Shown in pieces: positions 3,346 to 60,012 of a DNA stretch of 64,000 bases. Position numbers and translations under genes: made by a program. Each line of letters begins with the position of its first letter. Position 1 is the first letter of the stretch. The notes under the pieces were generated by a model that worked only from the letters and a program-made list of their open reading frames with translations, searched no databases and had not been told where the DNA came from. Source of the stretch: Haliotis rubra (taxonomy: Eukaryota); assembly GCF_003918875.1 (NCBI RefSeq), contig NW_025767000.1, positions 992,001 through 1,056,000 of the forward strand. The letters run 5' to 3'.

Positions 3346-3748
3346 ATGGATACAATATGTGAAGCCCACTTCTGGTTTCCCCCGCCTTGATATTGCTGGA
3401 ATATGGAATATTGCTTAAAGCGGCGTAAAACTAAACTCACTCACTCTATTGTCGTACTCAGGAGGCCCATGTTATATACGTACTTGGTGTGAGGCATCAA
3501 CAAAACAGTCTTAGTCTGGCGAAAAATGGAAATATTCACCCTATTTCCAAGAGCTTTAGAACAGGAATTTAGGAACATGAACCACTCATTCACTCTGTGA
3601 AACACGCACTCAACAGGCAAATGCGGTCGTTAGGGCATAAATTCTGTGGAACAATTCTCAGTTTATATTCGCAAAGTACGCAATGTTTTGATTCCGGTAA
3701 AAATTCTGCTTTTCAGTATCGTCCCAACAGACAACAGTCAGAAACACT

Positions 3749-6000
3749 ATGGCATCTGTGGAAGTAAGTGAAGACAACTCCGGATTTGTTGACAACTGGC
3801 AAAGTGGGAAGACCTTGGCGGAGTGTAACCTCCATATGTTGACCTCCGAGGATTCATGTGACGTCAGCTTCAGGGTTGGGAAAGAAGGGACGCCAGTCCG
3901 AGCTCACCGATATGTTCTGACGAGTCGGAGTTGTGTGTTCTACGCCATGTTGTGTGGCCCCCTGGCGGAGAAAGAGGACATCAAGATCCCAGATGTGGAG
4001 GAGGAACTATTCTCTGAAATGTTGAGGTATATGTATTGTAACTGTCATTATCACACACAGGATTTGGTCAGTTTCGTATAAACGCCTAGCTGGTTAACGC
4101 TAGAAATAAGTTGCAATTTAAGTCTTCTATTATGATACAACATTTTCTATCATTTGAAAACTGTTTTAATTCAAAATCAAAACTTGCTCTTCCCTGGGCT
4201 CACCTAACATTTATTGTGATTTTAGAGAACTAATTATGAATTGAATGAAGTGTAATGATCCCAGATGTGGAGGAGGAACTATTCTCTGAAATGTTGAGGC
4301 ATATATCTATGACGGTTAACTGTCCTTGTCATACATAAATGCCTACCTGGTAAAATATGCCATTTAATTCTTTTATTATGACGCAACATTTCTCAATCAT
4401 TTAATAAAAATATATTTTAATTTAAAATCAAAAGTTGCTCTCTCATGGTCGGTCATTCATGGTGATTTTAGAGATCTAATTATGAATGAGGTGGCAAAAG
4501 AGTTTGTGACAAGGGTATTTTTACAACAATAAGCACCATCGCTAATACAATACAAGGTCACCAGAAGTATAAGTATAATAACTCATCACATTACAAGTCC
4601 CCGCAGGACATTAACTAATTAATACAGTCAAAAACCGATATGTCGAGGTTAAAGAGGGGTTCGCAGGGTAAAGACTAAATTCTGGCTTTTACTTCGAGGC
4701 AACCAGAGGTCCGACACATCGGTGTTTTACTGCACTGTTAACAAACACCGGTCATGTGCTGGCTACCTTTAAGGGTTACATATATTGTAACGAAGATTTT
4801 AAGTTTATAAATTCATGAAGGTATGGTACGTCTAGTACCTTGTACCGATACATTACACGAAGATACAGTTTATACTAAAAGTCAAACTTTGCTCAAACAT
4901 TATACAAGGCCTAATTGTCATGAATATATATCACTTACAGGTACCTGTACACAGACACGACAACCGTGACTGCTGAGAATGTGACAGGTCTGTTGTACCT
5001 GGCCAAGAAGTACTCCGTGGGGGGTCTTGAGCGTCTGTGTGTGGCTTACCTGGAATCGTCCCTGACGGCAGAGAACGCCTGTGTCATCTTGGAACAAGCC
5101 CACGTCTTTGATGAGGAGAAGCTCTTTGACAGGGCTCTGGAGCTTGTTGTCAAACATTGTGGTACCACTGTTAAAAGCTCTGGCTTCACATCACTTTGTG
5201 CTTCTTGTTTTCATAAAGTTGTAAGCGCAGATTATTTCTTAACAAATGATGAAACAAGTTTCAATGCTGTCCTCTCGTGGGCCGAGTCAGAGTGTAAACG
5301 CCAAGGAAGGGAGATAACGCCGGAAAACAAACGTCTAGTTCTGGGAGAAGCAGTGTATAATATTTCCTTCACCTCCATGGACACCGAGATGTTTGCAAAA
5401 ACAGTTGTACCATCAGGGATATTATCAAGTGATGAAAGTAACAAACTGTTGTGCTACCTGATCTCAAATAATACTGATGTGGCTCCTTTCAAGATGAAGC
5501 CAGAGCTTCACATGGGGGTCAATCTGTATGCAAGTCAAATTCAATCAAGAACCAGTCAACAGGATTCTAGCAACTCATCCGGAACGAGTCGAGAGGATTC
5601 TAGCATCATCATCTCATGCAGCCAGGACATGCGCCTGACTGGTGTCTGGGCATATGGTGACGATAGCTGCATATATAACATTTCTCTAGACCAAGAAGAG
5701 TCACATACGAGTCAGTCTCACAATCTGAGATCGTATACTACTGTTAAGACCTGGGTTCAAAGAGAAGTATCAGCTGTGTTAGAGAGAAGTATTCCCAACA
5801 AGGTCCATCTGAAGCTGTCAGAGGTACTGATTCTAGAAAAATTACGCAGATATAGAATTGCAGTTACAAGAGAGTCAAATAAAAGTGGATTCTTGGGCTC
5901 CTCCGTATTCAATAATATCACACTTGGTGAATGCCAGATATCAGTTAAGGAAGGAAGTGGCCCGGGTCTCATTTCCAGTCTCATAATTGAGCATAAGTGA
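3749..6000 (+). CDS. BTB/POZ-BACK protein with divergent PHR-like C-terminus (BTBD1/2/3/6-like), copy A1; exons 3749-4026 and 4941-6000, ~445 aa
   Basis: Motifs DNWQ..CDVSFRVG..VRAHRYVL..SCVFYAMLCG and YLYTD..LYLAKKY. The GT-AG phase-2 intron joins in frame and the ORF is open to TGA at 5998-6000. Confidence 0.92.
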
Positions 6001-6840
6001 GACAACACACTGGCATGCATAGTGCTCCTCAAACAGTATACAGAACATGCTTGGGTAAAACTGTGATGAATGACTTGTCAACAACAACTACTCGGAAACG
6101 TTGAGAACAAATTTCAGAATGTCTTCACTATATAACAAATGCAAATTTGAGCTGCCAGGCTGTGTGAGATTACACATTAGCATGAGTATCTTCAGCACTG
6201 GAAAATACATTTAACGTCTTTGATATATTAAGACCGAAAAGTATGTGTCACGAAAATATATACTGTATATTTCAATTAGCATGGCCTGCCATCAGACAGC
6301 TTCCTCTTTAGCTGCCATCTTTGACACTATAAGGTCCCATCTTCAACGTCCTTTGTTTTGAAATGCTGTAATTGATTATTATTGTACCATAATGTCGCGG
6401 GTCCTGGCCGCTCATAAATCGGACTGAGGCGTAGTTGATTAAAATCTGTTTATTCTGTAAAATACATATATGGACATCAATGTAATATGATGTATGGCCG
6501 AGGGGTGTATCAACTCACCTCGGCCTTGGCGTGACATGAAGTGGCAAATATGAAGATGCCTACGTCACGGAACAGGTAATGCACGAGATGTCACGGAACA
6601 GGTAATGCACGAGATACTACTGGTATTACAACGAGAGTAAGAGTGATAGAAGAAGCGCTCGTAAATGAGCAGAGAGGAATAAAGTAAGAGATACGCAAAT
6701 GTATAGGGAAATACATCCGGCGACAATAATTCTACTATAATTCTTATTTATGTGCTGTATTAAGTGAGAATGTTTCTAGAATGTTATTTAATTGAATATA
6801 TATTGCATAAGTTTCTGTATATCAAATGCTTTTTCGCCAA

Positions 6841-6975
6841 GAGTGAGTGAGTGAGTGAGTTTAGTTTTACGCCGCTTTTAGCAATATTCCAGCAATATCA
6901 CGGCGGGGGACACCAGAAATGGGCTTCACACATTGTACCCATGTGGGGAATCGAACCCGGATCTTTGGCGTGACC
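6841..6975 (-). mobile_element. tRNA-derived SINE, family 1, 5'-truncated
   Basis: GGGTTCGATTCCCCACATGGGTACAATGTGTGAAGCCC..(ACTC)n on the minus strand. Confidence 0.85.
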
Positions 6976-7019
6976 CATTAGGTTGAACTGCCCCTTTTCG
7001 TCAAGAAATAGTGCTCTAT

Positions 7020-7143
7020 TCACCCTGAACCTTGTATAGTTGAGTTGAGTTGAGTTGGGTTTTACGTTGAGTTGAGTTGGGAATAATGCCGATGTGACGT
7101 AAAACCCACTCAACTCAACTCAACTATACAAGGTTCAGGGTGA
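7020..7143. repeat. Near-perfect ~47-bp inverted repeat around a SINE tail
   Basis: TCACCCTGAACCTTGTATAGTTGAG..TTTTACGT (7020-7067) versus ACGTAAAACCC..AAGGTTCAGGGTGA (7097-7143). Confidence 0.9.
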
Positions 7144-8583
7144 CCTGCAACGTCCCATAGTATATTGGAGGGATTCGTTTGACAATATCCGTAATAAACT
7201 ACACGCTTGCTATATCTATGGTAAGAATATGTGAACGATTCTTATTACTCCATTATCGCTTAAAACATTTCCATAACACAGTATCGAAGCCGATAATTAA
7301 TTTATCGTCTTATCACGCTTCTCCATGGTATCAAAAACCAAGCACATCACCTGAGGCCATGTGACTTGGAGGGGGTTAAGCACACTGACGTACAGCCAAC
7401 AGAGGTTATGTAATGAAACATGACTCAGTTAATACAGAGATGTCTGGAATGTAACAAAACCAGGAATTTTAACCCCAAAAAGGTTTCTTCTCCAGACTTA
7501 ACGCCGAAGACCCGGTTTCGATTTCCTACATGGTAACATTGCGTGAAGCCTATTTCTGGTGTCCCCCGCCGTGAAATTGCTTGAATATTGCTAAGAGCGG
7601 CGTAAAACTAAACTACGCTTGCTGACTCAGATCTACAGGAAGCAGATTATGATTCAGATCTCTCTTTAACTTATTAATGAATGGTCCATGTCAATATAGT
7701 ACTCAGTGTGTAGTTTTAAAGTTAAACACTGAGCAGTAAATGATTCTCTTTTAAAAAGTGGTGACTTTACTTTAACCATGGTGATTTTAAGTTGATTAAA
7801 TCCATGTTTCAGACCGCTGGCTTACTTGTTTTTTGAATTATGTAGATTTGAGGAATTTGCAATGATATTTTCATTTAATTTGATGTTGCTTAAAAAATTA
7901 TGCAGTCTTTGTTTTGTCAAGTAAATAGATGTATCATTAGTTCAACACTGATAACAGGTTGTTGGTTTTGTATATTTTGGAGATGACAATGTGATTTAAA
8001 TCACTCCATTCAAACAGTTAATTCAGAATTAATAGTGATATATCTCCAGCCTTTACCCTCAGTGACACTATGATGAGATTATTTGTGAACCTGATGTGCG
8101 TTCAAAGGTCATCTGCTTGAAGAAGTTGTGCATTTCAATAAAGCCCTTCAGTAATACCTTTTCTGCTTTTCTTTTATACATTTTTAATCGAATAATATTT
8201 GACAATGTTCATAGGACTGGTTGGTTTTCAGTGGGGCTGGTAGTTTTGATGGTAGTGAGTGAGTATGGTTTTACGACACTTCTAGCAATATTCCAGCAAT
8301 ATTTATCCACTGGAATCTCCCAACTGACTCACACATCGTACCCATGCGGGAATTCGAACCTGGGTCACCAGACCATCATGCTACCCCACCGCCCCTTATA
8401 CGCTGTGAGACCCAATGTGCAAAATTTTGGCGAGTTTTCGCACAATGCTTATTGTATGTCAAGAACTTGCAGATCTATGCAGTCTGATATTTAACGGCTC
8501 GACGAGAACCACAGTCGCGGATGATAATCATATTAATATTATAGACTATTCTGATCACCGATCCCGCCTAGCCCATATTTTCA

Positions 8584-8636
8584 GTCACGTGACAGACAGT
8601 CAGAGTTCGACATTGCGCTCAATACCACAGGTAAGA
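8584..8636 (+). promoter_or_regulatory. Putative promoter and non-coding first exon of B1: GTCACGTGAC E-box followed by a splice donor
   Basis: GC box CCCGCC at ~8563, GTCACGTGAC at 8584-8593, CAG/GTAAGA at 8630/8631, and acceptor CCTTCAG at 10097 just before the ATG. Confidence 0.55.
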
Positions 8637-9379
8637 CGGTTTGTCATGGTACTTGTTGTTGACACATGTATAATTGAGGTAAACACCACAAAATCTGATG
8701 AGGTGTTCCAGTACATGTGTTTTGTGGAATGTGAATAAGTACCTCCCCCCTCTCATCCAAACCCCCAATCTTCTTCGTAAATAGACTTTAGCCAGTAAAA
8801 GCTACCTGCACAGACAAGTGCAGTGACAGGTTCTCCCCTCGCACTGCGACACGTGGGGAAAACCACGAACACACTGACACGTGTAATTCAGTGTGGTGGA
8901 TGTCGGATAAGTCGACATACTCACATCAGTAAATATCAGTTATTTGAATGCAACAACTAGTTCTCATGAAATACGTGAATGACAATAACAAGTCATCATT
9001 CTTTCCGGTTTGTAATGTCAATGAACATTATGCGAGTTGTCATGGATATCCTACGAACGGAAACATGTAGATATCACGTACATGATATACGTTTCCATAC
9101 AGATGTAAGTACAGATACACATACTGATAACACACATTTTTCATATGATATTGATTATAACAACAAAAATACACCATGTGTATCGCTTGGATGCGGAAGT
9201 AAACAATGTACAGGGGAGATATCTCGTGCTGACCCAGCTGGGTATTTTCATACAGCTTCTGCCGACAGTGCAAGCTTTCGTTAATATCAGAACGTGTATA
9301 TAAAGTTGTACTGAATCCACCATGAAGCAAAGACAGTGCCTGTTTTCAAATTACATTTAAACACCCCTGTGTCGCTCAT

Positions 9380-9545
9380 GGAGTGAGTGGGTGAGTGAGT
9401 TTAGTTTTACGCCGCTTTCAGTAATATTCCAGCAATATCACGACGGGAACACCAGAAATGGGCTTCACACGTTGTACCCATGTGGGGAATCGAACCCGGG
9501 GATTCGGCGTGACGAGCGAACGCTATAACCACTAGGCTACCCCAC
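9380..9545 (-). mobile_element. tRNA-derived SINE, family 1
   Basis: A-box TAGCCTAGTGG, B-box GGTTCGATTCC and ACTC tail on the minus strand. Confidence 0.85.
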
Positions 9546-10456
9546 ATGAACGGAAGCGAAGAAACGTTCGATGCATTTTACGGATTTAGAGTAATCCCAA
9601 ATAAAACACAATCAAACAGATTAATATTCGAGTGACAATCAGTAAAGCATATTGGACGCTTAAACTAGCAATATCGTGTTTAGTTATTGGTAAAAAAGAA
9701 GACAATGGCTTCGTATTATATTATTTTTTTGTTAAATGGTAAATTATATAACATACCTATACTCATAACATAGATTATCTTTCACGTGGCTGAAATATGC
9801 GTGACTGAATGAGATTGAGATGCCCATGAATGGCAGAAGGAAAGTGCAATGTCGACATTTCATACATGCATTTGATAAAGATGGAATCGTTCAATGGTGA
9901 TTTCCTAATGTTCTTTTTGTTGTTTTTATTGTCCCCAAGACACACAGTCTTATGGGTTTCACCGATGTTGTAAATATCACGATTCGATTTTTCACAGATC
10001 GCCTTGTTTTCATATTTCTAATTGCGGCTTTAAACAACGTTCGTTCAGTCGGCTGAGTTGACGTCAGCAAGATCTTCAAAGGGTGCCATTCCTTCAGATA
10101 GCAACTGCAAACATCAATGGCCTCAATAGAAGTAAGAGAAGACAACTCTGTGTTCGATGACAACTGGCAAAGTGGGAAGTCCCTTGCAGAGTGTAACCTC
10201 CATATGTTGACCTCTGAGGATTCTTGTGACGTCAGCTTCCGGGTTGGGAATAATGAGAGGATAGTCTGAGCCCACCGATATGTTCTGATGAGTCGGAGTA
10301 GTGTGCTCCACGCCATGTTGTGTGGCCTCCTGGCGGAGAAAGAGGAAATTAGGATACCTGATGTAGAGGAAGAAATATTTAATGACATGTTGAGGTAGGT
10401 GATGGTCAGTGTTGTGCTTTGTTCGTCTTGTAGACGGTGTCTAAAAGTCCTTCGGG

Positions 10457-10700
10457 TCCATGAGGATCCGGGTTAGAATTGGTCTTCAGCAACCCATGCT
10501 TGTCGTAAGAGGCGACTAACGGGATCGGGTGGTCAGGCTCGCTGACTTGGTTGACACATGTCATCGCATCCCACTTGCGTAATGATCGATGCTCATGCTG
10601 TTGATCACTGGATTGTCTGGTCCAGACTCGATTATTTATAGACCGCCGTCATATAGCTGGAATATTGCTGAGTGTGGCTTTAAACAACCAAACCAAACCA
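10457..10700 (+). mobile_element. SINE-like family 2 (head ACCCGTGAAGATCCGGG, no recognisable tRNA head)
   Basis: GCTTGTCGTAAGAGGCGACTAA hairpin and tail GCTGGAATATTGCTGAGTG..AAACAA; more than 10 copies in the window. Confidence 0.8.
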
Positions 10701-10971
10701 AAAGCCCGTCGGTGCTTCGGGATGCCCACACACTGATACTGATAAAACTGAAATATTGCTGTAAACATTCACTCACTCACCTTGGTTGAAAAAGACAAAA
10801 AATATCTGTCAGTTTATTCAGTTCAAATCTCTAACACAATTAAGGCATCAAGAATTCAGAATAATAGCCATCAACCTCTACCAGTTAAAGTGGACTACCA
10901 GCATTTGAATGCAGCATTTTACTGTCTCGGACTAGCAGACTAGCGTGCATTTTGCATTCACGTCCTCGTTA

Positions 10972-11217
10972 TGAGTGAGTGAGTTTAGTTTTACGCCGCA
11001 CCCAGCAATATTCCAGCTCTGTAGCGGCGGTCTGTAAATAATCAGATCTGGACCAGACAATCCAGGGATCAACAGCGTGAACATCAATCTACGCAATTGG
11101 GATACGATGACATGTGTCAACCCAGTCAGCGAGCCTGACCACCCGATCCCATTAGACGCCTCTTACGACAAGCAAGGGTTACTGAAGATCAATTCTAACC
11201 CTGATCTTCACGGGTCT
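10972..11217 (-). mobile_element. SINE-like family 2, inverted relative to the 10457 copy in the same intron
   Basis: Reverse complement of the family consensus. Confidence 0.8.
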
Positions 11218-12494
11218 CCTTGTTATGAACAGTGAGTGTGTTTATTACAACGTCACTTTGAACAGAATGTCTAGATGCAAGGGCGTGTCAGCCTCATATG
11301 GGAGGAAAACCCCAAACTTCCCAGGTCGATCGCCAGTGCAATGAATATACTGTAATACATTTCCTGCCATAAACGTTCATTTTGTGAAAAAAACCCTGCT
11401 TTCTCCACTTGTATTTATTACTGTACATAGTCCTTACTGAAATTTCCCGATGTAAAATACATATATATTTGCAGATTTCTGTATACAGACACGACAACCC
11501 TGACTGCTGAGAATGTGACAGGTCTGTTGTATCTGGCCAAGAAATACGCCGTGGGGGGTCTAGAGCGTCTATGTGTGGCTTACCTGGAATCGTCCCTGAC
11601 GGCAGAGAACGCTTGTGTCATTCTGGAACAAGCCCACGTCTTTGATGAGGAAACACTGTTTGATAGGGCCTTGAAGGTCATTGTTCAGAATGGAGATGTT
11701 GCACTAGAGAGCTATAGCTTCAAAGATCTGTGTCAAACGTGTTTCCAAAACATTGTCAGTGCAGTTAGTGGAGAGGAGTATATTGTAAAACCGGAAAAAA
11801 TGTTTGGTTCTGCCATCTTGTGGGCTGAGGAAGAAATAAAGCGAAGGGAATTGGAAAGCACTCCAGAAAACAAGCGACAAGTTCTTGGGGAGTCAGTGTA
11901 TGAGCTTGGCTTCACATCAATGGGGATACAGGAATTTGCCAAAACGGTAGTTCAATCTGGAATATTATCAGGCGATGAATGTACAAAATTATTCTGTTTC
12001 TTATGTATATCTGGGACCGACGCAGCACCATTCAAAGTAAGTCCAGGACCTGCAGTCTCTTTGTATGGAAACAGGATCCGCACTGATCTCAGCGAGTTGG
12101 ATTCATACATCACCATCACGTGTAGCCATAACATGCGTTTGATCGGCCTTTGGGCATTTGGTAGCGACAACAGCAGGTATAACATAGTGCTGGATAGGAA
12201 ACAGGGAACTCCACGGCGTTGGATTGATCAGATGAGGATGTCAGCAAAGCCTGTGAGAACTGATGGGACAGAAGTGGAACTGGAACTGTCAGCACAGCCT
12301 ACTCTAGAGGCCAACGTTAATTACAGGTTCCGGACTCACATGAGCAATACTACAGGGGGATGGCTAGGTACTCAACTTAGGAAAGGCATCACTGTTGGCA
12401 AATGTCAGATATCCGTTTCACAGGCATACGAAGATGGCATCATCTCCAGACTCGTATTGCGGTTATGTGAGTTGGGTTAGCGTCATCACCAGTC

Positions 12495-12720
12495 TTTGAC
12501 GCGCCATAACGTTTAAACTGCTTTTAACGCTGATATATTGTAGGTTTGCTGGATAAAATTCAGACTTTGAAAATGAGGATCTGTGTGGGTACACATCAGC
12601 AGCCTTTGACACGCTATTTCGGTTAAAGTTCTTTTAACGCGGTGCGAGATATGTTGTAGCTTTGTTAGATACAGTTTAGATTTTGAAAATGGGAATGTGT
12701 GTGGATAAGATGTTTGACCT
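12495..12720. repeat. ~110-bp tandem duplication just 3' of the B1 stop (also present after B2 and B3)
   Basis: TTTGAC(G/A)CGC..TTTTAACGC..TTTGAAAATG occurs twice. Confidence 0.75.
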
Positions 12721-12765
12721 TGCTCATTAATTGTTTGATCGACATTCTTGAAGTTGGTGAGTCAA

Positions 12766-13152
12766 TAATGAAGCATACAACTTTATAGATAACAACTTCT
12801 TGTTCATTACATAGAGCACTATTAGCTTGATAATGGTGTAAGAGTGAGTGAGTGAGTTTAGGTTTACGCCGCACTCAGCAATATTCCAGCTATATCGGCG
12901 GTCTGTGAATAATCGAGTCTGGATCAGACAATCCAGTGATCAATAGCATGAGTATCCTTAAGCAATGGGAACCGATGACATGTGTCAACCAAGTCAGCGA
13001 GCCTAACGACCCGATCCTGTTAGTCGCCTCTTACGACACACATGGGTTACAGAAGATCAACTCTGTCCCGGATCTTCACGGGTAAAATGGTGTATGAATC
13101 TACATCGAAACGTCGCTCTAAGTAATAAACAAGAAGTTGTATGCTTCATTTT
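12766..13152 (+). mobile_element. Penelope-like pLTR fold-back remnant with a split hammerhead; family 2 SINE inserted at 12843-13084 (-)
   Basis: TTGATAA (12827) ..[SINE, TSD AATGGTGTA(A/T)GA].. ACATC GAAA CGTC (13102-13114), then AATAAACAAGAAGTTG; an inverted copy of this tail lies at 12766-12817. Confidence 0.7.
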
Positions 13153-15879: not shown

Positions 15880-16378
15880 ATTATTATGGATATACAAATT
15901 CTTGTATTCTGTGGAGGCGACGTTTCGACATAGATTTTAATGTCGTTGTCAAGCAAGTGATACATGAGTAACAAATTGAGAGAAAATATACATTAGTTGT
16001 TATTACAGTAGATAGGGAATGAGTTGTTTATACAATAAATGAGGTGAGATTGAGTAAGTTGATTGGATGCCAGAAGGGTGATACACAAGGACTGAATTAG
16101 AACTTATAAAACTGATAGGAAGCCAGGTGGATGTATATACGATGGATGGGGTTGATGTACATAGTTGAATTGAAAAATATAATGTACACAAGAAATATTA
16201 TTGATTACTTTATCAAGTGATGGTAGGCATTGGGAATGTAGTATCCTTCATCTCTGTTGAGGGCGGATCCTATCTTCTTGACGTGTACTGCTTCCAAAAG
16301 TTTACGAATTTTGTAGTCTGACTGGTTCTTTTCTATGGTTTTATTTGAATTATGATATTGTGTGACAAATGTGTATTG
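15880..16378 (-). mobile_element. Penelope-like element 3' end: GIY-YIG C-terminus plus pLTR
   Basis: YKIRKLLEAVHVKKIGSALNRDEG matches the PLE endonuclease tail; a hammerhead-like motif lies in the downstream pLTR. Confidence 0.8.
15916..15955 (-). ncRNA. Minimal type I hammerhead ribozyme, U3-A8 core variant
   Basis: GC-UUGACAA-C-GACAU-(8 nt)-AUGUC-GAAA-C-GUC-GC. Confidence 0.65.
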
Positions 16379-22490: not shown

Positions 22491-22654
22491 GGGGCGATGG
22501 GGCAACATGGTGATTAAAGCGTTCGCTCGTCACGCCGAAGACCCGGGTTCGATTCTCCACATGGGTACAATATGTGAAGCCCATTTCTGGTGTCCCCCGA
22601 CGTGATATTGCTGGAATATTGCTAAAATCGGCGTAAGACTAAACTCACTCACTC
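22491..22654 (+). mobile_element. tRNA-derived SINE, family 1, full length
   Basis: GGGTTCGATTC B-box and ACTC tail; its 3' half is shared with 3346-3447. Confidence 0.85.
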
Positions 22655-22993
22655 TTGTCGTACTTAGGAGGCCCATGTAATATACGTACTTGGTGTGAAG
22701 CATCAACAAAACAGTCTTAGTCTTGGGAAAAGTGGAAATATTCACCCCATTTCCAAGAATTTTACATGAACTTGGGAACATGAACCACTCATTTACTTTG
22801 GACATGGGGTGTTTTTTGTAGCATAATAGAATTGTTAGCTATGTGAAACACGCACTCAACTGGCAAATGCGGTCTTTAGGGCTTAAATTCTGTTGAATAA
22901 TTCTGAGTTTATATTCGAGAAGGACACACTGTTTTGATTCCGATAAAATTCTGCATTTTAGAATCGCCCCAACAGACAGCATTCAGGAACAGT

Positions 22994-25013
22994 ATGGCCT
23001 CTGTGGAAGTAAGTGGAGACAACTCCGGATTTGTTGACAACTGGCAAAGTGGGAAGACCTTGGCGGAGTGTAATCTCCACATGTTGACCTCTGAGGATTC
23101 TTGTGACGTCAGCTTCCTGGTTGGGAAAGAAGGGATGCCAGTCCGAGCTCACCGATATGTTCTGATGAGTCGGAGTTGTGTGTTCTACGCCATGTTGTGT
23201 GGCCCCCTGGCGGAGAAAGAGGACATCAAGATCCCCGATGTGGAGGAGGAACTATTCTCTGAAATGTTGAGGTATATATCCCTATGGCGGTTAGGTATTG
23301 TTTACATTATTGGTCATACCTGCATAATAGGGTTAACTGTCATTGTCATACATAAAAGTCTAGTTGGTTAAATATGCCTTATAATTCTTTTATTATGATA
23401 CAACATTTCTCTATCCTTTCATCAAAATATATTTTAATTTAAAATCAAAAGTTGCTCTTTCTTGGTCATTCATGGTGACTTTAGAGATCTAATTATGAAT
23501 AAGGTGGCAAAAGAGTTTGTGACAAGGGTATTTTTACAACAATAAGCACCATCGCTAATACAATACAAGGTCACCAGAAGTATAAGTATAATAACTCATC
23601 AGATTACAAATCCCCGCAGGACATTAACTAATTAATACAGTCAAAAACCGATATGTCGAGGTTAAAGAGGGGTTCGCAGGGTAAAGACTAAATTCTGGCT
23701 TTTACTTCGAGGCAACCAGAGGTCCAACACATCGATGTTTTACTGCACTGTTAACAAACATCGGTCATGTGCTGGCTACCTTTAAGGGTTACATATATTG
23801 TAACGAAGATTTTAAGTTGATAAATTCATGAAGGTATGGCACGTCTAGTACCTTGTACCGAAACATTACACGAAGATACAGTTTATACTAAAAGTCAAAC
23901 TTTGCTCAAACATTGTACAAGGCCTAATTGTCATGAATACATATCATTTACAGGTACCTGTACACAGACAAGACAACCCTGACTGCTGAGAATGTGACAG
24001 GTCTGTTGTACCTGGCCAAGAAGTACTCCGTGGGGGGTCTTGAGCGTCTGTGTGTGGCTTACCTGGAATCGTCCCTGACGGTAGATAACGCCTGTGTCAT
24101 CTTGGAACAAGCCCATGTCTTTGATGAGGAGAAGCTCTTTGACAGGGCCCTGGAGGTTGTTGTCAAACATGGTGGTACCACTGTTAAAAGCTCTGGCTTC
24201 ACATCACTTTGTGCTTCTTGTTTTCATAAAGTTGTAAGCGCAGATTATTTCTTAACAAATGATGAAACAAGTTTCAATGCTGTCCTCTCGTGGGCCGAGT
24301 CAGAGTGTAAACGCCAAGGAAGGGAGATAAGTCCGGAAAACAAACGTCTAGTTCTGGGAGAAGCAGTGTATAATATTGCCTTCACCTCCATGGACACGAA
24401 GATGTTTGCAGAAACAGTTGTACCGTCAGGGATATTATCAAGTGATGAAAGTAACAAACTGTTGTGCTACCTGATCTTAAATGTTACTGATGTGGCTCCT
24501 TTCAAAATGAAGCCAGAGCTTCACATGGGGGTCAATCTGTATGCAAGTCAAATTCAATCAAGAACCAGTCAACAGGATTCTAGCAACTCATCCGGAACCA
24601 TTCGAGAGGATTCTAGCATCATCATCTCATGCAGCCAGGGCATGCACCTGACTGGTGTCTGGGTATATGGTGACAGCAGCTGCATATATAACATTTCTCT
24701 ATATCAAGAAGAGTCACATAGGAGTCAGTCTCAGAATATGAGATCGTGTACTACTGTTAAGACCTGGGTTCTAAGAGAAGTATCAGCTGTGTTAGAGAGA
24801 AGTATTCCCAACGAGGTCCATCTGAAGCTGTCGGAGGTATTGATTCTAGAAAAGTCATCCAGATATAAAATTGAAATTACAAGAGAGTCAAATAAAAGTG
24901 GATTCTTGGGCTCCTCCGTATTCAATAATATCACACTTGGTGAATGCCAGATATCAGTTAAGGAAGAACGTGGCCCGGGTCTTATTTCCAGACTCATAAT
25001 GGAGGAAATATGA
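22994..25013 (+). CDS. BTB-BACK-(PHR-like) copy A2; exons 22994-23271 and 23954-25013, ~445 aa
   Basis: Same exon lengths (278 and 1060 nt) and splice sites as A1; reading frame open. Confidence 0.92.
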
Positions 25014-26591
25014 GACAACACACTGGCATGTAAAGAGCTCCTCAAACAGTATACAGAACATGTGTACATACTGTTCCACTTCCTTGGGTAAAACAGTGAT
25101 GGATGACCTGTCAACAACAACTACTCGGAAACGTTGACAACAAATTTCAGAATGTCTTCACTATATAACAAATGAAAATTTGAGCTGCCAGGCTGTGTGA
25201 GATTACACAATAAAATGAGTATCTTCAGCACTGGAAAATACATTTAACTTCTTTGATATATTAAGACCAAAAAGTATGTGTCACGAAAATATATACTGTA
25301 TATTCCAATTAGCATGGCCTGCCATCAGACAGCTTCCTCTTTAGCTGCCATCTTGGACACTGTAAGGTCCCATCTTCAACGTCCTTTGTTTTGAAATGCT
25401 GTACTTAATTATTATTCTACCATAATGTCGAGGGTCCTGGCCGCTTATAAATAGGACTGAGGCGTACTTGATTAAAATTTGTTTATTCTTTAAAATACAT
25501 ATATGGACATCAATATAATATGATATATGGCCGAGGGGTGTATCAACTCACCTCGGCCGTGGCGTGACATGAAGTGGCAAATATGAAGATGCCTATGTCG
25601 GGGAACAGGTAATGCACGAGATGTCAAGGAACAGGTAATGCACGAGATACTACTGGTATTACAACCAGAATCCATGTTTCAGACCGCTGGCTTACTTTTT
25701 TTTGAATTATGTAGATTTGAGGAATTTGCAATGATATTTTCATTCAATTTGATGTTGCTTAAAAAATTATGCAGTTTTTGTTTTGTAAAGTAAATAGATG
25801 TATCATTAGTTCAACACTGACAGCAGGTTGTTGGTTTTGTATATTTTGGAGATGACAATGTGATTTAAATCATTCCATTCAAACAGTTAATTCAGAATTA
25901 ATAGTGATATATCTCCAGCCTTTACCCTCAGTGACACTATGATGAGATTATTTGTGAACCTGATGTGCATTCAAAGGTCATCTGCTTGAAGAAGTTGTGC
26001 ATTATAAAGCCCTTCAGTAATACCTTTTCTGCTTTTCTTTTATAATTTTTTAATCGAATAATATTTTACAATGTTCATAGGACTGGTTGGTTATCAGTGG
26101 GGCTGGTAGTTTTTATGGTAGTGGGTGAGTATGGTTTTGCGACGCTTTTAGCAATATTCCAGCAATATTTATCCACTGGAATCTCCCAACTGACTCACAC
26201 ATCCTACCCATGCGGGAATTCGAACCTGGGTCATCAGACCATCAGGCTACCCCACCGCCCCTTATACGCTGTCAGACCCATGATACAAAATTTTGGCGAG
26301 TTTTTGCACAATGCTTATTGTATGTCAAGAACTTGCAGATCTATGCAGTCTGATATTTAACGGCTTGCAAAATCTCCGAAATGATTGTTTATGTGGAATT
26401 GATAGATTATATTAACTTCGAACTATATAACCCCCCCCACCCCCCACCCCCACACATCCCAACACACACAGACGCACGCACGCACGCACGCACACAGAAC
26501 GTATAATGTCGACGAGAACTACAGTCTGATGATAAGCACAATAATATTATAGACTATTCTGATCACCGATCCCGCCTCGCACATATTTTCA

Positions 26592-26644
26592 GTCACGTGA
26601 CAGACGGTCAGAGTTCAACATTGCGCTCAATACCACAGGTAAGA
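26592..26644 (+). promoter_or_regulatory. Putative promoter and first exon of B2
   Basis: GTCACGTGAC at 26592-26601 and donor CAG/GTAAGA at 26638/26639. Confidence 0.55.
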
Positions 26645-27971
26645 CGGTTTGTCATGTTACTTGTTGTTGACACATGTATATTTGAGGTAAACACCACAAA
26701 ATCTTATGAGGGGTTCCAGTACATGTGTTTCGTGGAATGTGAATAAGTACCTCCCCCCTCTCATCCATTCCCCCAATCTTCTTCGTAAATAGACTGTAGC
26801 CAGTAAAAGCTACCTGCACGGACAAGTGCAGTGACAGGTTCTCCCCTCGCACTGCGACACGTGGGGAAAACCACGAACACACTGACACGTGTAATTCAGT
26901 GTGGTGGATGTCGGATCAGTCGACATACTCACATCAGTAAATATCAGTTATTTGAATACGACAACTAGTTCTCATGAAATACGTGAATGACAATAACAAG
27001 TCATCATTCTTTCCGGTTTGTAATGTCAATGAACATTATGCGAGTTGTCATGGATATCCTGCGAACGGAAACATGTAGATATCAAGTACATGATATACGT
27101 CTCCATACAGATGTAAGTACAGATACACATACTGATTAGACACATTTCTCATATGATATTGATTATAACTACAAAAATACACCATGTGTATCGCTTGTAT
27201 CGCTTGGACGCGGAAGTAAACAATGTACAGGGGAGATAACTCGTGCTGACCCAGCTGGGTATTTTCATACAGCTTCTGCCGACAGTGCAAGCTTTCGTTA
27301 ATATCAGAACGCGTATATAAAGTTGTACTGAATCCACCATGAAGCAAAGTCAGTGCCTGTTTTCAAATTACATTTAAACACCCCTGTGTCGCTCATGGAG
27401 TGAGTGGGTGAGTGAGTTTAGTTTTACGCCGCTTTCAGTAATATTCCAGCAATATCACGACGGTAATCCCAAGTAAAACACAATCAAACAGATTAATATT
27501 CGAGTGAGAAATCAGTAAAGCATATTGGACGCTTAAACTAGCAATATCGTGTTTAGTTATTGGTAAAAAAGAAGACAATGGCTTCGTATTATATTTTTTT
27601 TGGTTAAATGGTAAATTTTATAACACACCTATACTCATAACATAGATTATCTTTCACGTGGCTGAAATATGCGTGACTGAATGAGATTGAGATGCCCATG
27701 AATGGCAGAAGGAAAGTGCAATGTCGACATTTCATACATGCATTTGATAAAGATGGAATCGTTCAATGGTGATTTCCTAATGTTCTTTTTGTTGTTTTTA
27801 TTGTCCCCAAGACGCTCAGATGTTGTAAATATCACGATTCGATTTTTCACAGATCGCCTTGTTTTCATATTACTAATTGCGGCTATAAACAACGTTCGTT
27901 CAGTCGGCTGAGTTGACGTCAGCAAGATCTTCAAAGGGTGTCATTCCTTCAGATAGCAACTGCAAACATCG

Positions 27972-28839
27972 ATGGCCTCAATAGAAGTAAGAGAAGACAA
28001 CTCTGTGTTCGATGACAACTGGCAAAGTGGGAAGTCCCTTGCAGAGTGTAACCTCCATATGTTGACCTCTGAGGATTCTTGTGACGTCAGCTTCCGGGTT
28101 GGGAATAATGAGAGGATAGTCTGAGCCCACCGATATGTTCTGATGAGTCGGAGTAGTGTGCTCCACGCCATGTTGTGTGGCCCCCTGGCGGAGAAAGAGG
28201 AAATAAGGATACCTGATGTAGAGGAAGAAATATTTAATGACATGTTGAGGTAGGTGATGGTCAGTGTTGTGCTTTGTTCGTCTTGTAGACGGTGTCTAAA
28301 AGTCCCTCGGGTCCATGAGGATCCGGGTTAGGCGACTAACGGGATCGGGTGGTCAGGGCACCGTCTGGCTCGCTGACTTGGTTGACACACGTCATCGCAT
28401 CCCAATGACTGAGATTGATACTCATGATGTTGATCACTGGATTGTCTGGCCCAGACTACATTATATACAGGCCGCTGTTATATAGTTGAAATATTGTTGA
28501 GTGTGGCGTTAAACAACAACCAAACCAAACCACACGTCCCTCGAAGCTTCGGTTTCCCACACACTGACACCACATGATAAAACTGAAATCTGCTGTAAAC
28601 ATTCACTCACTCACCTTGGTTGAAAGAGACAAAAAATATCTGTCAGTTTATTCAGTTTCAATCTGTAACAAAATTAAGGAATCGAGAATTCAGAATTATA
28701 GCCATCAACCTCTACCAGTGAGCGAGGACTACCAGCATTTTTAATTCAGGATTTTACTGTCTCGGACTAGCGGACTAGCGTGCATTTTGCATTCACGTTC
28801 ACGTTATGAGTGAGTGAGTTTAGTTCTCAGCCATATTCC

Positions 28840-28873
<34 letters not shown>

Positions 28874-30213
28874 CCACCCGATGGCGTTAGTCGCCTCTTA
28901 CGACAAGCATGGGTTACTGAAGATCAATTCTAACCCGGACCTTCACGGGTCTCCTCGTTATGAACAGTGAGTGTGTTTATTACAACGTCACTTTGAACAG
29001 CATGTCAAGATGCAAGGGTGTGTCAGCCTGATATGGGAGGAAAACCCGAAGCTTCCCAGGTCGTTCGCCAGTGCCATGAATATACTGTAATACATTTCCT
29101 GCCATAAACGTTCATTTTGTGAAAAAAAGGCTTTTACCACTTGTACTTATTACTGTACATAGTCCTTTATTGAAATTTCCCGATGTAAAATACATATATA
29201 TTTGCAGATTTCTGTATACAGACACGACAACCCTGACTGCTGAGAATGTGACAGGTCTGTTGTACCTGGCCAAGAAATACGCCGTTGGGGGTCTAGAGCG
29301 TCTTTGTGTTGCTTACCTGGAATCGTCCCTGACGGCAGAGAACGCTTGTGTCATTTTGGAACAAGCCCACGTCTTTGATGAGGAAACACTGTTTGATAGG
29401 GCCTTGAAGGTTATTGTTCAGAATGGAGATGTTGCACTAGAGAGCTATAGCTTCAAAGATCTGTGTCAAACGTGTTTCCAAAACATTGTCAGTGCAGTTA
29501 ATGGAGAGGAGTATATTGTAAAACCGGAAAGAATGTTTGGTGCTGCCATCTTGTGGGCTGAGGAAGAAATAAAGCGAAGGGAATTAGAAAGCACTCCAGA
29601 AAACAAGCGACAAGTTCTTGGGGAGTCAGTGTATGAGCTTGGCTTCACAGCAATGGGGATACAGGAATTTGCCAAAACGGTAGTTCCATCTGGAATATTA
29701 TCAGGCGATGAATGTACAAAATTATTCTGTTTCTTATGTATATCTGGGACTGACGCATCACCATTCAAAGTAAGTCCAGCACCTGCAGTCTCTTTGTATG
29801 GAAACAGGATCCGTACTGATCTCAGCGAGTTGGATTCATACATCACCATCACGTGTAGCCATAACATGCGTTTGATCGGCCTGTGGGCATTTGGTAGCGA
29901 CACCAGCAGGTATAACATAGTGCTGGATAGGAAACAGGGAACTCCACGGCGTTGGATTGATCAGATGAGGATGTCAGCAAAGCCTGTGAGAACTGATGGG
30001 ACAGAAGTGGAACTGGAACTGTCAGCTCAGCCTACTTTAGAGGCCAACGCTAATTACAGATTCCGGACTCACATGAGCAATACTACAGGGGGGTGGTTAG
30101 GTACTCAACTTAGGAAAGGCATCACTGTTGGCAAGTGTCAGATATCCGTTTCACAGGCTTACGAGGATGGCATCATCTCGAGACTCGTATTGCGGTTATG
30201 TGAGTTGGGTTAG
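27972..30213 (+). pseudogene. BTB-BACK-(PHR-like) copy B2; exons 27972-28249 and 29208-30213; same TGA at codon 51 (28122-28124)
   Basis: Same structure as B1; otherwise open for ~427 codons. Confidence 0.8.
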
Positions 30214-30683
30214 GGTCATTTGACGCGCCATTTCGGTTAAAGTTCTTTTATCGCTGCGAGAGATATAGTGTATCTTTGCTGGATAAAGTTTAGATTTTGA
30301 AAATGTGTATCTGTATGGTACACATCAGCAGCCTTTGACACGCTATAACGGTTAAAGTTCTTTTAAGGCTGCGCGAGATATATTGCAGCTTTGTTAGATA
30401 CACTTTAGATGTGAAAATGAGAATGTGTGTGGGTAAGATGTTTGACCTTGCTCACTAATTGTTTGGTCGGCATTCTAGAAGTTGGTGAGTCTAAAATGAA
30501 GCACACAACTTTATGGAAGACAACTTATTGTTTATTGTTTATTGCCGATGTAAGAATCTACATCGAAACGTCTCTCTATGTAATAAACAAGAAGTTGTCA
30601 GCCATAAAGTTGTATGTTTCATTTTATACCTTGGTGATAGTTTGTCATCATGTCCAGCGAAGTGGACCATTGTTCATGTTGCC

Positions 30684-36124: not shown

Positions 36125-37168
36125 GATGAAGGAAAACTAAGTTCTACTTCTTTATTGCAATGAGTGCGACGTTTCGGTGTAGGTACTAACACCGTTATCA
36201 AGCAAGTGATACAACAGTTTGAAACAAGGAGAATATATACATTGCTGCATAGTGAGTATATACAATTAACAAAGTTGATGTACATGGGATATTTGATAAG
36301 TGATTACAGCAGAGGAGGTTGATGTACAGAGTGATCATGATTGATTGTGATTAGAGTTGAGTTTATACAATTGATGAGTTTGACGTACAATGGGATGATG
36401 ATAAGTAAGTAGGTTGAAGTACACTAGTTGTGATTGCAAGCACAAAAGGGAACGTGGAAGCTGGACTGACGCTTTATGTTCTTTGATTCGTGGTGGGAGC
36501 GGGCGGGATGTTTCACCAATATAGAAGTGACAACGAATCTGGTAGACAACTCCGGAGGGTCATGTTTGTTGTTGACTGTGGTTTGGATGGACTTGCCTTT
36601 CAGGAACAGGACGTCTATGCCTGCTTGCTGCTGAAGGAGTCGTCTTATCTGGTGGCTGACTGCTGGGACATACGGGATACTTATTACAAAGGGTGCTGAT
36701 TGCCGGCGGGGTGGTTTAACTCTTGGGTTGAGGGTGGTTGTGATGACATTGTTGACTAACTTCTTGGGGTACTGGTTATAATGGACGAAGGCATGGCGGA
36801 GGTGGTTTAGTTCGGTTTCTTGGGCTTCTGTTATCGATGTTTTTGGCTCTTCGGGTGAGAGTGGATATGATGCCTTTCTTAACCTGTAGAGGGTGGTTGG
36901 AGGTAAAGTGAAGGTATTGGTCGGTATGGGTAGGTTTCCTGTAGACAGTAGTGGAGAGCTTGTTCTCTTCTTTCTTTACTAGGACGTCGAGGAAAGGGAG
37001 CTTGTTGTCAGATTCTTCTTCCATTGTGAACTGCACACGGGGATGTTGGGAATTCAGGTGGTTGAGGAGGTGTTCAGGGTTGTCGTTGGGGTTGAGAACT
37101 ACAAAGGTGTCGTCTACTTTTCTATACCAGCATATTGGTGCGATGGGTGATGTCAGCAGGGCCTTGTC
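36125..37168 (-). mobile_element. Penelope-like retroelement, 5'-truncated and internally deleted (RT core/thumb plus pLTR)
   Basis: WYRKVDDTF..HLNSQHPRVQFTMEEESDNKLPFLDV..TVYRKPTHTDQYLHFTSNHP..ISIPYV. Confidence 0.9.
36164..36204 (-). ncRNA. Minimal type I hammerhead ribozyme, U3-A8 core variant
   Basis: UGC-UUGAUAA-C-GGUGU-(8 nt)-ACACC-GAAA-C-GUC-GCA, followed by AAUAAA. Confidence 0.7.
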
Positions 37169-37716
37169 AGTGCAGTTAGTGGAGAGGAGTATATTGTGAA
37201 ACCGGAAAAAATGTTTGTTGCTGCCATCTTGTGGGATGAGGAGGAAATAGAGCGAAGGGAATTAGAAAGCACTCCAGAAAACAAGCGACAAGTTCTTGGG
37301 GAGTCAGTGTATGAGCTTGGCTTCACATCAGTGGGGATACAGGAGTTTGCCAAAACGGTTGTTCCATCTGGAATATTGTCAGGAGATGAATGTACCAAAT
37401 TATTCTGTTTCTTGTGTATATCTGGGACTGACGCAGCCCCATTCAAAGTGAGACCAGCACCTGCAGTCTCTTTGTATGGAAACAGGATCCGCACTGATCT
37501 CAGCGAGTTGGAATCCTACATCACCATCACGTGTAGCCATAACATGCGTTTGATCGGCCTTTGGGCATTTGGTAGCGACACCAGCAGGTATAACATAGTG
37601 CTGGATAGGAAACAGGGAACTCCACGGCGTTGGATTGATCAGATGAGGACAGAAGTGGAACTGGAGCTGTCAGCTCAGCCTACTTTAGAGGCCAACGTTA
37701 ATTACAGGTTCGGTTA
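37164..37716 (+). pseudogene. BTB-BACK-(PHR-like) copy B3: fragment of exon 2 with two internal deletions
   Basis: Begins mid-exon, fused to the Penelope RT; 30-bp deletion at ~37648 and ~145-bp deletion at ~37711; the 3' flank matches the B1 flank. Confidence 0.9.
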
Positions 37717-59786: not shown

Positions 59787-60012
59787 ACCCGTGAAGACCC
59801 GGGTTAGAATTGGTCTTCAGCAGCCCTTGCTTGTCGTAAGAGACGACTAACGGGATCGGGAGGTCAGGCTCGCTGACTGGGTTGACACTTGTCACCGCAT
59901 CCCAATTGCGGAGATCGATGCTCATGCTGATGATCACTGGATTGTCTGGTTCAGACTCGATTATTTACAGACCGCCACCATATAGCTGGAATATTGCTGA
60001 GAGCGGCGTTAA
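59787..60012 (+). mobile_element. SINE-like family 2, full length
   Basis: ACCCGTGAAGACCCGGGTTAGAATTGGTCTTCAG head through GGCGTTAAA tail. Confidence 0.85.

What the first reader, a model, noticed from the sequence alone, without database searches (positions are those of the whole stretch)
10117..12480. Two 'pseudogenes' share a TGA at codon 51 yet show a purifying-selection signature
Seen: B1 and B2 both have CGA>TGA in V-R-A-H but keep the promoter motif, splice sites and an open exon 2. Manual B1/B2 comparison of exon 2 gives about 19 synonymous versus 9 mostly conservative changes. If the stop predated the duplication, neutral decay should give mostly non-synonymous changes. Exon 1 differs at only ~2 of 278 nt versus ~28 of 1006 in exon 2. 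Options (inference): recent spread of the stop by gene conversion or crossover; recoding (readthrough, or A-to-I UGA>UGG); or re-initiation at Met58 giving a BTB-truncated decoy.
Basis: partly seen in the sequence, partly recalled or inferred. Interest (0 to 1): 0.8.

Follow-up and report, generated by a model that had tools for sequence, protein, structure and literature searches.

The report
Shared young stop in BTB paralogues
Two neighbouring copies of an abalone BTB-adaptor gene carry the same premature stop most likely because the front of the gene was recently copied from one copy to the other, so their "still under selection" look dates from before the break; this is ordinary gene-family decay, if the stop is not an assembly error.

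Summary
In this Haliotis rubra window, B1 (10117-12480) and B2 (27972-30213) both have TGA at codon 51 and are otherwise open. Exon 1 differs at 2/278 nt and exon 2 at 28/1006 nt (19 synonymous, 9 non-synonymous). dN/dS is 0.13-0.15, and omega=1 is rejected at p=3e-6.

The paradox dissolves:
- A third full copy, Bu, lies 77 kb upstream. It keeps CGA at codon 51 but has a +1 frameshift, and it shows the same low omega against B1 and B2. Low pairwise omega is therefore a legacy, not proof of present function.
- Orthologues in H. asinina and H. rufescens, and all A-type paralogues checked, encode Arg or Gly at codon 51.
- In the intron and downstream flank B1 groups with Bu, and B2 is 6-12% away. 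In 10117-10474 B1 and B2 differ by only 0.8% and share three derived bases, including the T.
- The stop is thus a young CpG transition sitting in a short homogenised (gene-conversion) tract. It can have existed for at most about 12-20% of the B1-B2 divergence.

I found no SECIS element, no editing duplex and no read-through structure.

Caveat: public short-read contigs show only C at this site, and the assembly is Nanopore-based. An assembly artefact therefore remains a serious rival (about 25%).

The parts
10117..10394 (+). B1 exon 1 (codons 1-92 plus 2 nt); start of the BTB domain
   Evidence: 100% match to the NCBI model from Met58 on
10267..10269 (+). B1 in-frame TGA at codon 51. It replaces CGA (Arg) in strand beta-2 of the BTB fold and is a CpG C>T transition.
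10395..11474 (+). B1 intron, holding an inverted pair of SINE-like repeats (10458-10685 / 10988-11213)
11475..12480 (+). B1 exon 2 (rest of BTB, BACK-like helices, C-terminal all-beta domain, stop codon)
10117..10558 (+). Homogenised (gene-conversion) tract at its maximum extent in B1 coordinates. It is bounded by the B2-private sites 10116 and 10559. The shared derived bases 10267 T, 10365 A and 10429 T lie inside it.
27972..28249 (+). B2 exon 1
28122..28124 (+). B2 in-frame TGA at codon 51
28250..29207 (+). B2 intron. The SINE pair is partly deleted or replaced by a (TA)n run. The intron is 6-12% diverged from the B1 intron.
29208..30213 (+). B2 exon 2
37164..37711 (+). Bp, a partial fourth B copy. 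It holds only codons about 186-378 of exon 2 and has a 30-nt gap. It is a fragment.
3346..12808 (+). Duplicated unit 1 (A1 gene 3749-5997 plus B1). Its counterpart is unit 2.
22561..30536 (+). Duplicated unit 2 (A2 gene 22994-25004 plus B2), 80-96% identical to unit 1 depending on the segment

Best explanation
B1 and B2 are members of a tandem, birth-and-death array of BTBD6-like CUL3-adaptor genes (BTB, BACK-like helices and a C-terminal beta domain) on H. rubra scaffold QXJH01000328.

The B lineage evolved under purifying selection (omega about 0.11-0.15) while the A-B unit was being amplified. Recently a CpG transition turned the family-wide CGA (Arg51) into TGA in one copy. A short interlocus gene-conversion event covering exon 1 and the first about 80-160 nt of the intron (at most 442 bp) then copied the stop-bearing haplotype into the other copy.

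Both copies are now most likely null. The stop lies 125 nt before the only exon junction and inside the BTB core. The low dN/dS of exon 2 records the long period before the stop, not present function.

Shown: the lesions, the mosaic genealogy and the dN/dS values. Inferred: the conversion mechanism, its direction, and loss of function.
For: 1. CGA is the older state. Bu (L001:10001-10278) has CGA, H. rufescens has CGA and H. asinina has AGA. Five A-type paralogues have CGA, one has GGA, and a gapped seventh could not be read.

2. The genealogy is discordant.
- In the intron, B2 is the odd one out at 81 of 93 variable sites; downstream, at 29 of 41. The flanks therefore give ((B1,Bu),B2).
- In 10117-10474, B2 is the odd one at 0 of 10 variable sites and Bu at 7 (Fisher p=2.7e-8).

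3. B1 and B2 share three derived bases within 163 bp: 10267 T, 10365 A and 10429 T, polarised with H. asinina. This points to shared descent rather than two independent hits.

4. B1-B2 divergence varies by region:
- 0.7-1.3% in exon 1 and the 5' end of the intron;
- 6.3% in the 3' part of the intron;
- dS 8.8% in exon 2;
- 12% downstream.
At near-neutral sites of the tract there are 2 differences where 8.9-11.9 are expected (P=0.0006-0.007).

5. Internal control. Bu carries a +1 frameshift at codon 213, yet omega is 0.19-0.22 against B1 and 0.12-0.15 against B2 (p=2e-6 and 2e-8).

6. A two-phase model lets the stop have existed for at most 12-20% of the B1-B2 divergence. The tract divergence (0.7% against 8.8%) gives about 8%.

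7. The array is full of decayed members: a broken A copy beside Bu, plus exon fragments at 866, 878, 949 and 984 kb.

8. Interlocus conversion that moves or removes premature stops between tandem paralogues is documented (fog-2/ftr-1, PMC3966223).
Against: - The T at 10267 is not independently confirmed. In Logan contigs of two samples of the best-holding organism (X1, X3) and of a second organism (X4), the only contig over the site reads C. Those contigs also miss B1/B2 alleles that are ancestral and so probably real (10385 A, 10350 T). Absence in the contigs is therefore weak evidence.
- The assembly is Nanopore-based with a single Pilon round.
- The exon genealogy is a finer mosaic than one event explains. 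At 10350 B2 matches Bu. The B1-Bu exon-2 dS (0.117) far exceeds their intron divergence.
- NCBI still models both genes as coding from Met58, and B1 has two transcript variants. Transcription is therefore likely.
- No RNA or protein data for H. rubra could be examined.
Confidence: 0.55

Rival explanations
1. Assembly or polishing artefact. Either the T at codon 51 of one or both copies is a residual Nanopore consensus error at a (methylated) CpG. Or one real TGA copy was imposed on its near-identical paralogue when multi-mapping short reads were used for polishing. Under this reading the B genes, or at least one of them, are intact in the animal.
For: - Only C is seen at 10267 in the contigs of X1, X3 and X4.
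- The assembly came from wtdbg and DBG2OLC Nanopore assemblies of two individuals, with two rounds of Racon and one of Pilon (PMC6774278).
- Bu's lesion is an AAA>AAAA homopolymer change, the classic Nanopore error type.
- An earlier follow-up in this scan concluded that frameshifts elsewhere in this assembly are mostly assembly errors (s1-327970; an unchecked lead).
- B1, B2 and Bu are identical for about 150 nt upstream and 60 nt downstream of the site, so short reads cannot be placed uniquely.
Against: - A context-driven error should also hit Bu, which has the same surrounding sequence but reads C.
- Random substitution errors at the same base of two loci are very unlikely.
- The T travels with two other shared derived bases. 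One of them (10429 T) is seen in X1 contigs.
- The contigs also fail to show B1/B2 alleles that are ancestral (10385 A, 10350 T). Their silence on T is therefore weak evidence.
- Most A-type genes in the same array are intact, so local error density is not high.
Confidence: 0.25
2. The genes still make a useful protein despite the stop. One route is initiation at Met58, giving a BACK-plus-beta-domain protein with a crippled BTB (a decoy that binds substrate but not CUL3 or partners). The other is recoding of UGA by read-through, A-to-I editing to UGG, or selenocysteine.
For: - Both frames are open after the stop and the splice sites are intact.
- NCBI models both genes from Met58.
- The B2 lineage shows 2 non-synonymous to 6 synonymous changes.
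- An inverted SINE pair in the B1 intron would form about 226 bp of dsRNA, the kind of duplex that recruits ADAR.
Against: - No Rfam family (hence no SECIS) matches at gathering score anywhere in the window, or at E<=1 in the 2 kb behind B1.
- No inverted repeat covers 10267-10269. The local fold is no better than shuffled sequence (z=+0.68).
- The SINE duplex lies 189 nt downstream of the stop and is largely destroyed in B2.
- The base after the stop is G, not the leaky UGA-C/CUAG context (established knowledge).
- Five ATGs precede the Met58 ATG, whose own context is weak (C at -3, A at +4). It lies 18 nt after a 50-codon ORF.
- A Met58 start deletes helix 23-33, strands beta-1 and beta-2 and most of alpha-1 of the BTB fold.
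- The low omega is equally shown by the frameshifted Bu.
- The B1 lineage has 7 non-synonymous to 7 synonymous changes.
Confidence: 0.08
3. Two independent CGA>TGA transitions at a hypermutable CpG occurred in B1 and in B2, without any sequence exchange.
For: CGA>TGA at CpG is the commonest nonsense change (established knowledge). The flank tree puts B1 with Bu, so a single origin needs an extra event.
Against: - The T is linked in both copies to two further shared derived, non-CpG bases (10365 A, 10429 T).
- The whole tract has no B2-private change, while the adjoining intron has 81.
Confidence: 0.05
4. The stop predates the B1/B2 duplication, and Bu's CGA was restored later by conversion from another copy.
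For: Bu's exon 2 shows patches that match other copies (Bp, contigs in X1), so Bu has received sequence from elsewhere.
Against: Exon 2 would then have drifted neutrally for the whole B1-B2 divergence. That is rejected (omega 0.15, p=3e-6). The model allows at most 12-20% of that time without constraint. Exon 1 is also far younger than exon 2 between B1 and B2.
Confidence: 0.03

Closest known systems
Interlocus gene conversion moving premature stops between tandem paralogues (C. elegans fog-2/ftr-1; human pseudogene-to-gene conversions such as GBA1/GBAP1)
   Same: These are short tracts exchanged between nearby direct-repeat paralogues of high identity, and a stop codon is carried or erased by the tract (PMC3966223; PMC12075325 abstract). 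Here a tract of at most 442 bp with discordant genealogy carries the TGA.
   Different: In those cases the event was observed directly or causes disease in an otherwise functional gene. Here it is inferred from one assembly. Donor and recipient are unknown, and both copies end up disabled.
Young duplicated (non-processed) pseudogenes in segmental duplications
   Same: Introns, promoter and splice sites are kept. There is a single disabling lesion, and the dN/dS still looks constrained because most divergence predates the lesion.
   Different: NCBI annotates all three B copies as protein-coding with shortened products. Absence of expression is not shown.
Tandem BTBD6-family expansions in gastropods (56 and 35 copies in two vent snails)
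   Same: The protein family and the tandem-cluster mode of growth are the same (PMC7736800). Gigantopelta aegis proteins are among the hits.
   Different: The abalone array is smaller. That paper does not deal with decay or conversion of members.
Vertebrate BTBD6/BTBD3/BTBD1/BTBD2 (BTB-BACK-PHR CUL3 adaptors)
   Same: The BTB domain is closest to human BTBD6 (2VKP, E=4e-19). The model of the intact orthologue superposes on BTB-BACK CUL3 adaptors. There is an all-beta C-terminal domain.
   Different: The Pfam PHR model does not match the B or A proteins. BACK is below the cut-off in the H. asinina orthologue. These are lineage-specific paralogues, not one-to-one orthologues.

Membership tests
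BTB-BACK-PHR proteins (BTBD1/2/3/6 type) | N-terminal BTB/POZ domain | tested here: met
   PF00651 matches the exon pieces (E=4.6e-6 and 3.9e-4) and the intact H. asinina orthologue (E=1.3e-22, residues 32-133). The best solved relative is the human BTBD6 BTB domain.
BTB-BACK-PHR proteins (BTBD1/2/3/6 type) | BACK helical domain after the BTB | tested here: inconclusive
   PF07707 is above its cut-off in H. rufescens P0003 and in A1 (P0016) but below it in H. asinina P0002 (E=0.073). The model has helices 139-270 and Foldseek aligns it to BTB-BACK of KLHL11 and KBTBD2.
BTB-BACK-PHR proteins (BTBD1/2/3/6 type) | C-terminal PHR beta-sandwich | tested here: inconclusive
   PF08005 is not found in B or A proteins but is present in 37-38%-identical H. 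rubra relatives. The model shows an all-beta domain at 286-423. That domain was not searched alone.
Duplicated (non-processed) pseudogene | Disabling lesion in an otherwise gene-like copy that keeps its intron | tested here: met
   TGA at codon 51 in B1 and B2. The intron and splice sites are kept. The lesion is seen only in the assembly.
Duplicated (non-processed) pseudogene | Relaxed constraint after the lesion | tested here: inconclusive
   The B1 lineage has 7N:7S (between neutral, P=0.024, and omega 0.13, P=0.10). The B2 lineage has 2N:6S. There are too few changes since the stop to decide.
Duplicated (non-processed) pseudogene | No functional product (no translation past the stop) | not testable with these tools
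   No H. rubra RNA reads were available. The one presumed RNA run (another organism, contigs only) does not cover codon 51.
Interlocus gene conversion tract | A segment whose genealogy contradicts that of its flanks | tested here: met
   B2-private sites number 0 of 10 in 10117-10474 against 81 of 93 in the intron (Fisher 2.7e-8). Region-by-pattern chi-square is 83, p=1e-14.
Interlocus gene conversion tract | Shared derived variants in the two converted copies | tested here: met
   10267 T, 10365 A and 10429 T are shared by B1 and B2 and are derived relative to Bu. At 10365 and 10429 H. asinina, and at 10267 and 10365 H. rufescens, carry the same base as Bu. At 10267 H. asinina has A (AGA, also Arg).
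Selenoprotein gene (UGA = Sec) | SECIS element in the 3' UTR | tested here: not met
   No Rfam family reaches gathering score in the window, and none reaches E<=1 in 12400-14400.
ADAR recoding site (UGA>UGG) | Edited base lies in a dsRNA formed with a complementary sequence | tested here: not met
   No inverted repeat includes 10267-10269. The only long duplex is the intronic SINE pair 10458-10685 / 10988-11213, which is degraded in B2. Editing itself could not be tested.
Programmed stop-codon read-through | Stimulatory 3' context or downstream structure | tested here: not met
   The context is UGA-G. Folding 10200-10340 gives -39.6 kcal/mol against a shuffle mean of -42.0 (z=+0.68).

The most novel reading that the evidence does not exclude
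B1 and B2 are kept as genes for N-terminally truncated proteins that start at Met58. These would have BACK helices and the substrate-side beta domain but a BTB fold lacking beta-1 and beta-2. They could act as dominant-negative decoys of the intact A/B-type CUL3 adaptors. On this reading the stop-bearing exon 1 was spread between copies because it was favoured.
Probability: 0.07. Interest if true: 0.55.

Novelty: new member of a known kind. Interest (0 to 1): 0.2.

Why it matters
This is mainly a methodological caution. In tandem families that exchange sequence, a low pairwise dN/dS between two disabled copies does not argue for hidden function. Here the unambiguously frameshifted copy shows the same value.

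It also documents a lineage-specific amplification and decay of a BTBD6-like adaptor array in H. rubra: at least three A-B units, against the one A-B unit seen in the 25-kb H. asinina locus fetched. And it flags that lesions shared by paralogues in this Nanopore-based assembly need read-level confirmation before any biological reading.

If the truncated-decoy reading were true, it would be a modest but real example of adaptive gene truncation spread by conversion.

Tried and rejected
- **Selenocysteine:** no SECIS or any Rfam hit.
- **ADAR or read-through structure:** no complementary sequence or stable fold at the stop.
- **Ancient stop:** rejected by omega and by the two-phase bound.
- **Single unequal crossover instead of conversion:** B1-B2 divergence rises gradually upstream (2.2% at 9591-10116, about 4-5% at 7799-9449, 7.6% at 4257-6636) rather than staying uniformly low. 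A bounded tract, or several, fits better.
- **Haplotigs placed in tandem:** 6-12% non-coding divergence and different repeat content make allelism unlikely, but it is not excluded.
- **Reads:** only Logan contigs were on offer. They neither confirmed nor excluded the T, and the single read-laying run is spent.
- **Earlier scan notes by words:** two word searches (BTB stop codon pseudogene; assembly error homopolymer frameshift Nanopore) returned nothing.
- **C-terminal domain:** the Foldseek search of the whole model was dominated by BTB-BACK, so the C-terminal domain was not identified.
- **Search hygiene:** Exon pieces were searched by reference. Codon 51 was left out of the codon analyses, and exons were joined only inside scripts for the codon alignment.
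Full report
**What the window is**

The exon-2 product of the gene in the finding is 100% identical to NCBI's Haliotis rubra protein XP_046576056/57, "BTB/POZ domain-containing protein 3-like". That gene lies on scaffold QXJH01000328.1 of GCA_003918875.1. The window therefore corresponds to about 992,001-1,056,000 of that scaffold. There are no N runs in the window.

**Checking the observation**

B1 reads ATG at 10117, exon 1 10117-10394, a GT..AG intron, and exon 2 11475-12480. B2 is 27972-28249 plus 29208-30213.
- Both have TGA at codon 51 (10267-10269 and 28122-28124) and no other stop in 427 codons.
- Exon 1 differs at 2 of 278 nt and exon 2 at 28 of 1006 nt.
- In exon 2, Sd=19 and Nd=9, with dS=0.0876 and dN=0.0117. 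Omega is 0.134 (NG86) or 0.154 (ML), and the LRT against omega=1 is 21.9 (p=2.9e-6).

**What the gene is**

- Pfam finds BTB in the exon pieces and in the intact orthologues, with BACK at or near its cut-off.
- The closest solved sequence is the BTB domain of human BTBD6.
- An AlphaFold model of the intact H. asinina orthologue (mean pLDDT 86.9) shows BTB, a helical BACK-like region and an all-beta domain at 286-423. It superposes on BTB-BACK CUL3 adaptors.
- Residue 51 sits in strand beta-2 (48-52). A Met58 start would remove helix 23-33, beta-1, beta-2 and most of alpha-1.

**The wider locus**

B1 and B2 belong to two copies of a unit about 8-9.5 kb long, spaced about 18-19 kb apart, that also holds an A-type paralogue. 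The units are 3346-12808 and 22561-30536, 80-96% identical by segment. A partial B copy (Bp) lies at 37164-37711.

Fetching the neighbours of other H. rubra family members gave 860-896 kb and 915-1056 kb of the scaffold.
- It holds a third full B copy, Bu (L001:10001-10278 plus 11360-12366), 77 kb upstream of B1.
- It also holds several intact A-type genes, a broken A copy next to Bu, and isolated exon fragments.
- This is a birth-and-death tandem family, like the BTBD6 expansions reported in other gastropods (PMC7736800).

**Codon 51 elsewhere**

- Bu has CGA, H. rufescens has CGA and H. asinina has AGA. Both orthologues are intact at 424-427 aa.
- Five A-type paralogues on the scaffold have CGA and one has GGA. 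A seventh exon-1 copy aligned with gaps and could not be read.
- TGA is therefore a derived C>T change at a CpG.

Bu is disabled differently. An extra A in GAAGAAATAAAG shifts the frame at codon 213. All three full-length B copies are thus broken in this assembly.

**Why the purifying signature is not a paradox**

First, the frameshifted Bu gives the same signal. Omega is 0.19-0.22 against B1 and 0.12-0.15 against B2, and both reject neutrality (p=2e-6 and 2e-8). Low pairwise omega here reflects history.

Second, the genealogy is mosaic. I compared B1, B2 and Bu site by site.
- B2 is the odd sequence at 81 of 93 variable sites in the intron and at 29 of 41 downstream. The flanks therefore say ((B1,Bu),B2).
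- In 10117-10474, B2 is odd at 0 of 10 sites and Bu at 7 (Fisher p=2.7e-8 against the intron). Heterogeneity over the five regions gives chi-square 83, p=1e-14.
- The tract is bounded by B2-private sites at 10116 and 10559, so it is at most 442 bp.
- Within it, B1 and B2 share three bases that are derived relative to Bu and the outgroup: 10267 T, 10365 A and 10429 T.

Third, the divergence of B1 from B2 differs sharply by region.

| Region | B1-B2 divergence |
|---|---|
| Exon 1 | 0.7% |
| First 80 nt of the intron | 1.3% |
| 3' part of the intron | 6.3% |
| Exon 2 synonymous sites (dS) | 8.8% |
| Downstream | 12% |

At the near-neutral sites of the tract there are 2 differences where 8.9-11.9 are expected (P=0.0006-0.007).

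The exon-2 dS matches the flanks. Exon 2 therefore diverged with the duplication, under constraint, while the stop-bearing 5' end is much younger.

A two-phase model (constraint at omega 0.07-0.15, then neutrality) allows the unconstrained phase to cover at most 12-20% of the divergence. The tract itself suggests about 8%.

Polarised counts fit a recent relaxation but are too small to prove it. The B1 lineage has 7N:7S and the B2 lineage 2N:6S.

**Mechanism proposed**

A CpG transition created TGA in one copy. A short interlocus conversion tract over exon 1 carried it to the other copy.

A single unequal crossover fits less well, because B1-B2 divergence climbs gradually further upstream instead of staying low.

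Conversion between tandem paralogues that carries or erases premature stops is well documented (PMC3966223).

The stop lies 125 nt before the only exon junction, so the transcript should be an NMD target where that rule applies. This is an inference from established knowledge.

**Alternatives tested**

- Selenocysteine: no SECIS or any Rfam match.
- Editing: no complementary sequence reaches the TGA. The only long duplex is an intronic inverted SINE pair 189 nt downstream, and it is degraded in B2.
- Read-through: UGA-G context and no stable local structure (z=+0.68).
- Met58 initiation: five ATGs precede it, its context is weak, and it follows a 50-codon ORF by 18 nt. NCBI's models nevertheless start there.

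**The main caveat**

I could only lay Logan contigs, not raw reads.
- In two samples of the best-holding organism (X1, X3) and one of a second organism (X4), the single contig over 10267 reads C.
- Bu-type copies carry C, and contigs keep only the better-covered branch of a variant.
- The same contigs also lack B1/B2 alleles that are ancestral and so probably real (10385 A, 10350 T). They do show the B1/B2 bases at 10418-10429 in X1.
- The T is therefore neither confirmed nor excluded.

The assembly combined Nanopore wtdbg and DBG2OLC assemblies of two individuals, with two Racon rounds and one Pilon round (PMC6774278). Bu's lesion is a homopolymer change. An earlier follow-up in this scan judged frameshifts elsewhere in this assembly to be errors (a lead, not evidence).

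Against an artefact, the identical context in Bu reads C, and the T is linked to other shared derived bases. I put the artefact at about 25%.

The presumed RNA run of the second organism (X8) covers the B-like exons and UTRs but not the unique intron bins. This suggests that B-type genes are transcribed in that species. It does not cover codon 51.

**Verdict**

Recoding and re-initiation are not needed and have no support.

This is an ordinary case of decay and concerted evolution in a tandem family, and it needs read-level confirmation.

Exon pieces were used by reference.

Noticed in passing
L001:10001-12366 (scaffold about 925.3-927.7 kb): A third full B copy (Bu) with Arg51 intact but a +1 frameshift (AAA>AAAA) at codon 213. 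NCBI annotates it as a 235-aa protein (XP_046576059). The A-type gene beside it (L001:756-6042) is also broken, by two frame changes and a missing segment.
   Followed up: partly
window 11505-12133 against L001 and 37164-37711: The exon-2 synonymous divergence of B1 from Bu (dS 0.117) is several times their intron divergence (about 1.4%). Bu-private sites cluster in two patches, and several match the partial copy Bp or H. rufescens. Exon 2 seems patch-converted from copies not in the assembly.
   Followed up: partly
window 11548-11571 (contigs of X1 and X3): Short-read contigs carry a B-like exon-2 haplotype with one G fewer in the G-run at 11548-11553 and G at 11571. This is a further frameshifted B-like copy or allele, absent from the assembled copies.
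   Followed up: no
window 10458-10685 and 10988-11213; many other places (e.g. 12845-13083, 21791-22016, 38084-38326, 59787-60013): A SINE-like repeat of about 230 nt occurs at very high genomic copy number (contig depths in the millions). It forms an inverted pair, 84-91% complementary, inside the B1 intron. The first copy is also present in H. asinina.
   Followed up: partly
window 12400-14400: An earlier first-reader note proposes hammerhead ribozymes behind each B gene. An Rfam scan of this stretch at E<=1 found no family at all, hammerheads included.
   Followed up: partly
window 30190-30213 and downstream: NCBI's B2 model (XP_046576007, 417 aa) leaves exon 2 a few codons before the stop and splices to a further 3' exon, giving an unrelated 57-residue tail. 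B1's model does not do this.
   Followed up: no
window 16229-19966: A large block of tandem repeats with a period of about 62 bp, with an inverted portion (self-BLAST).
   Followed up: no
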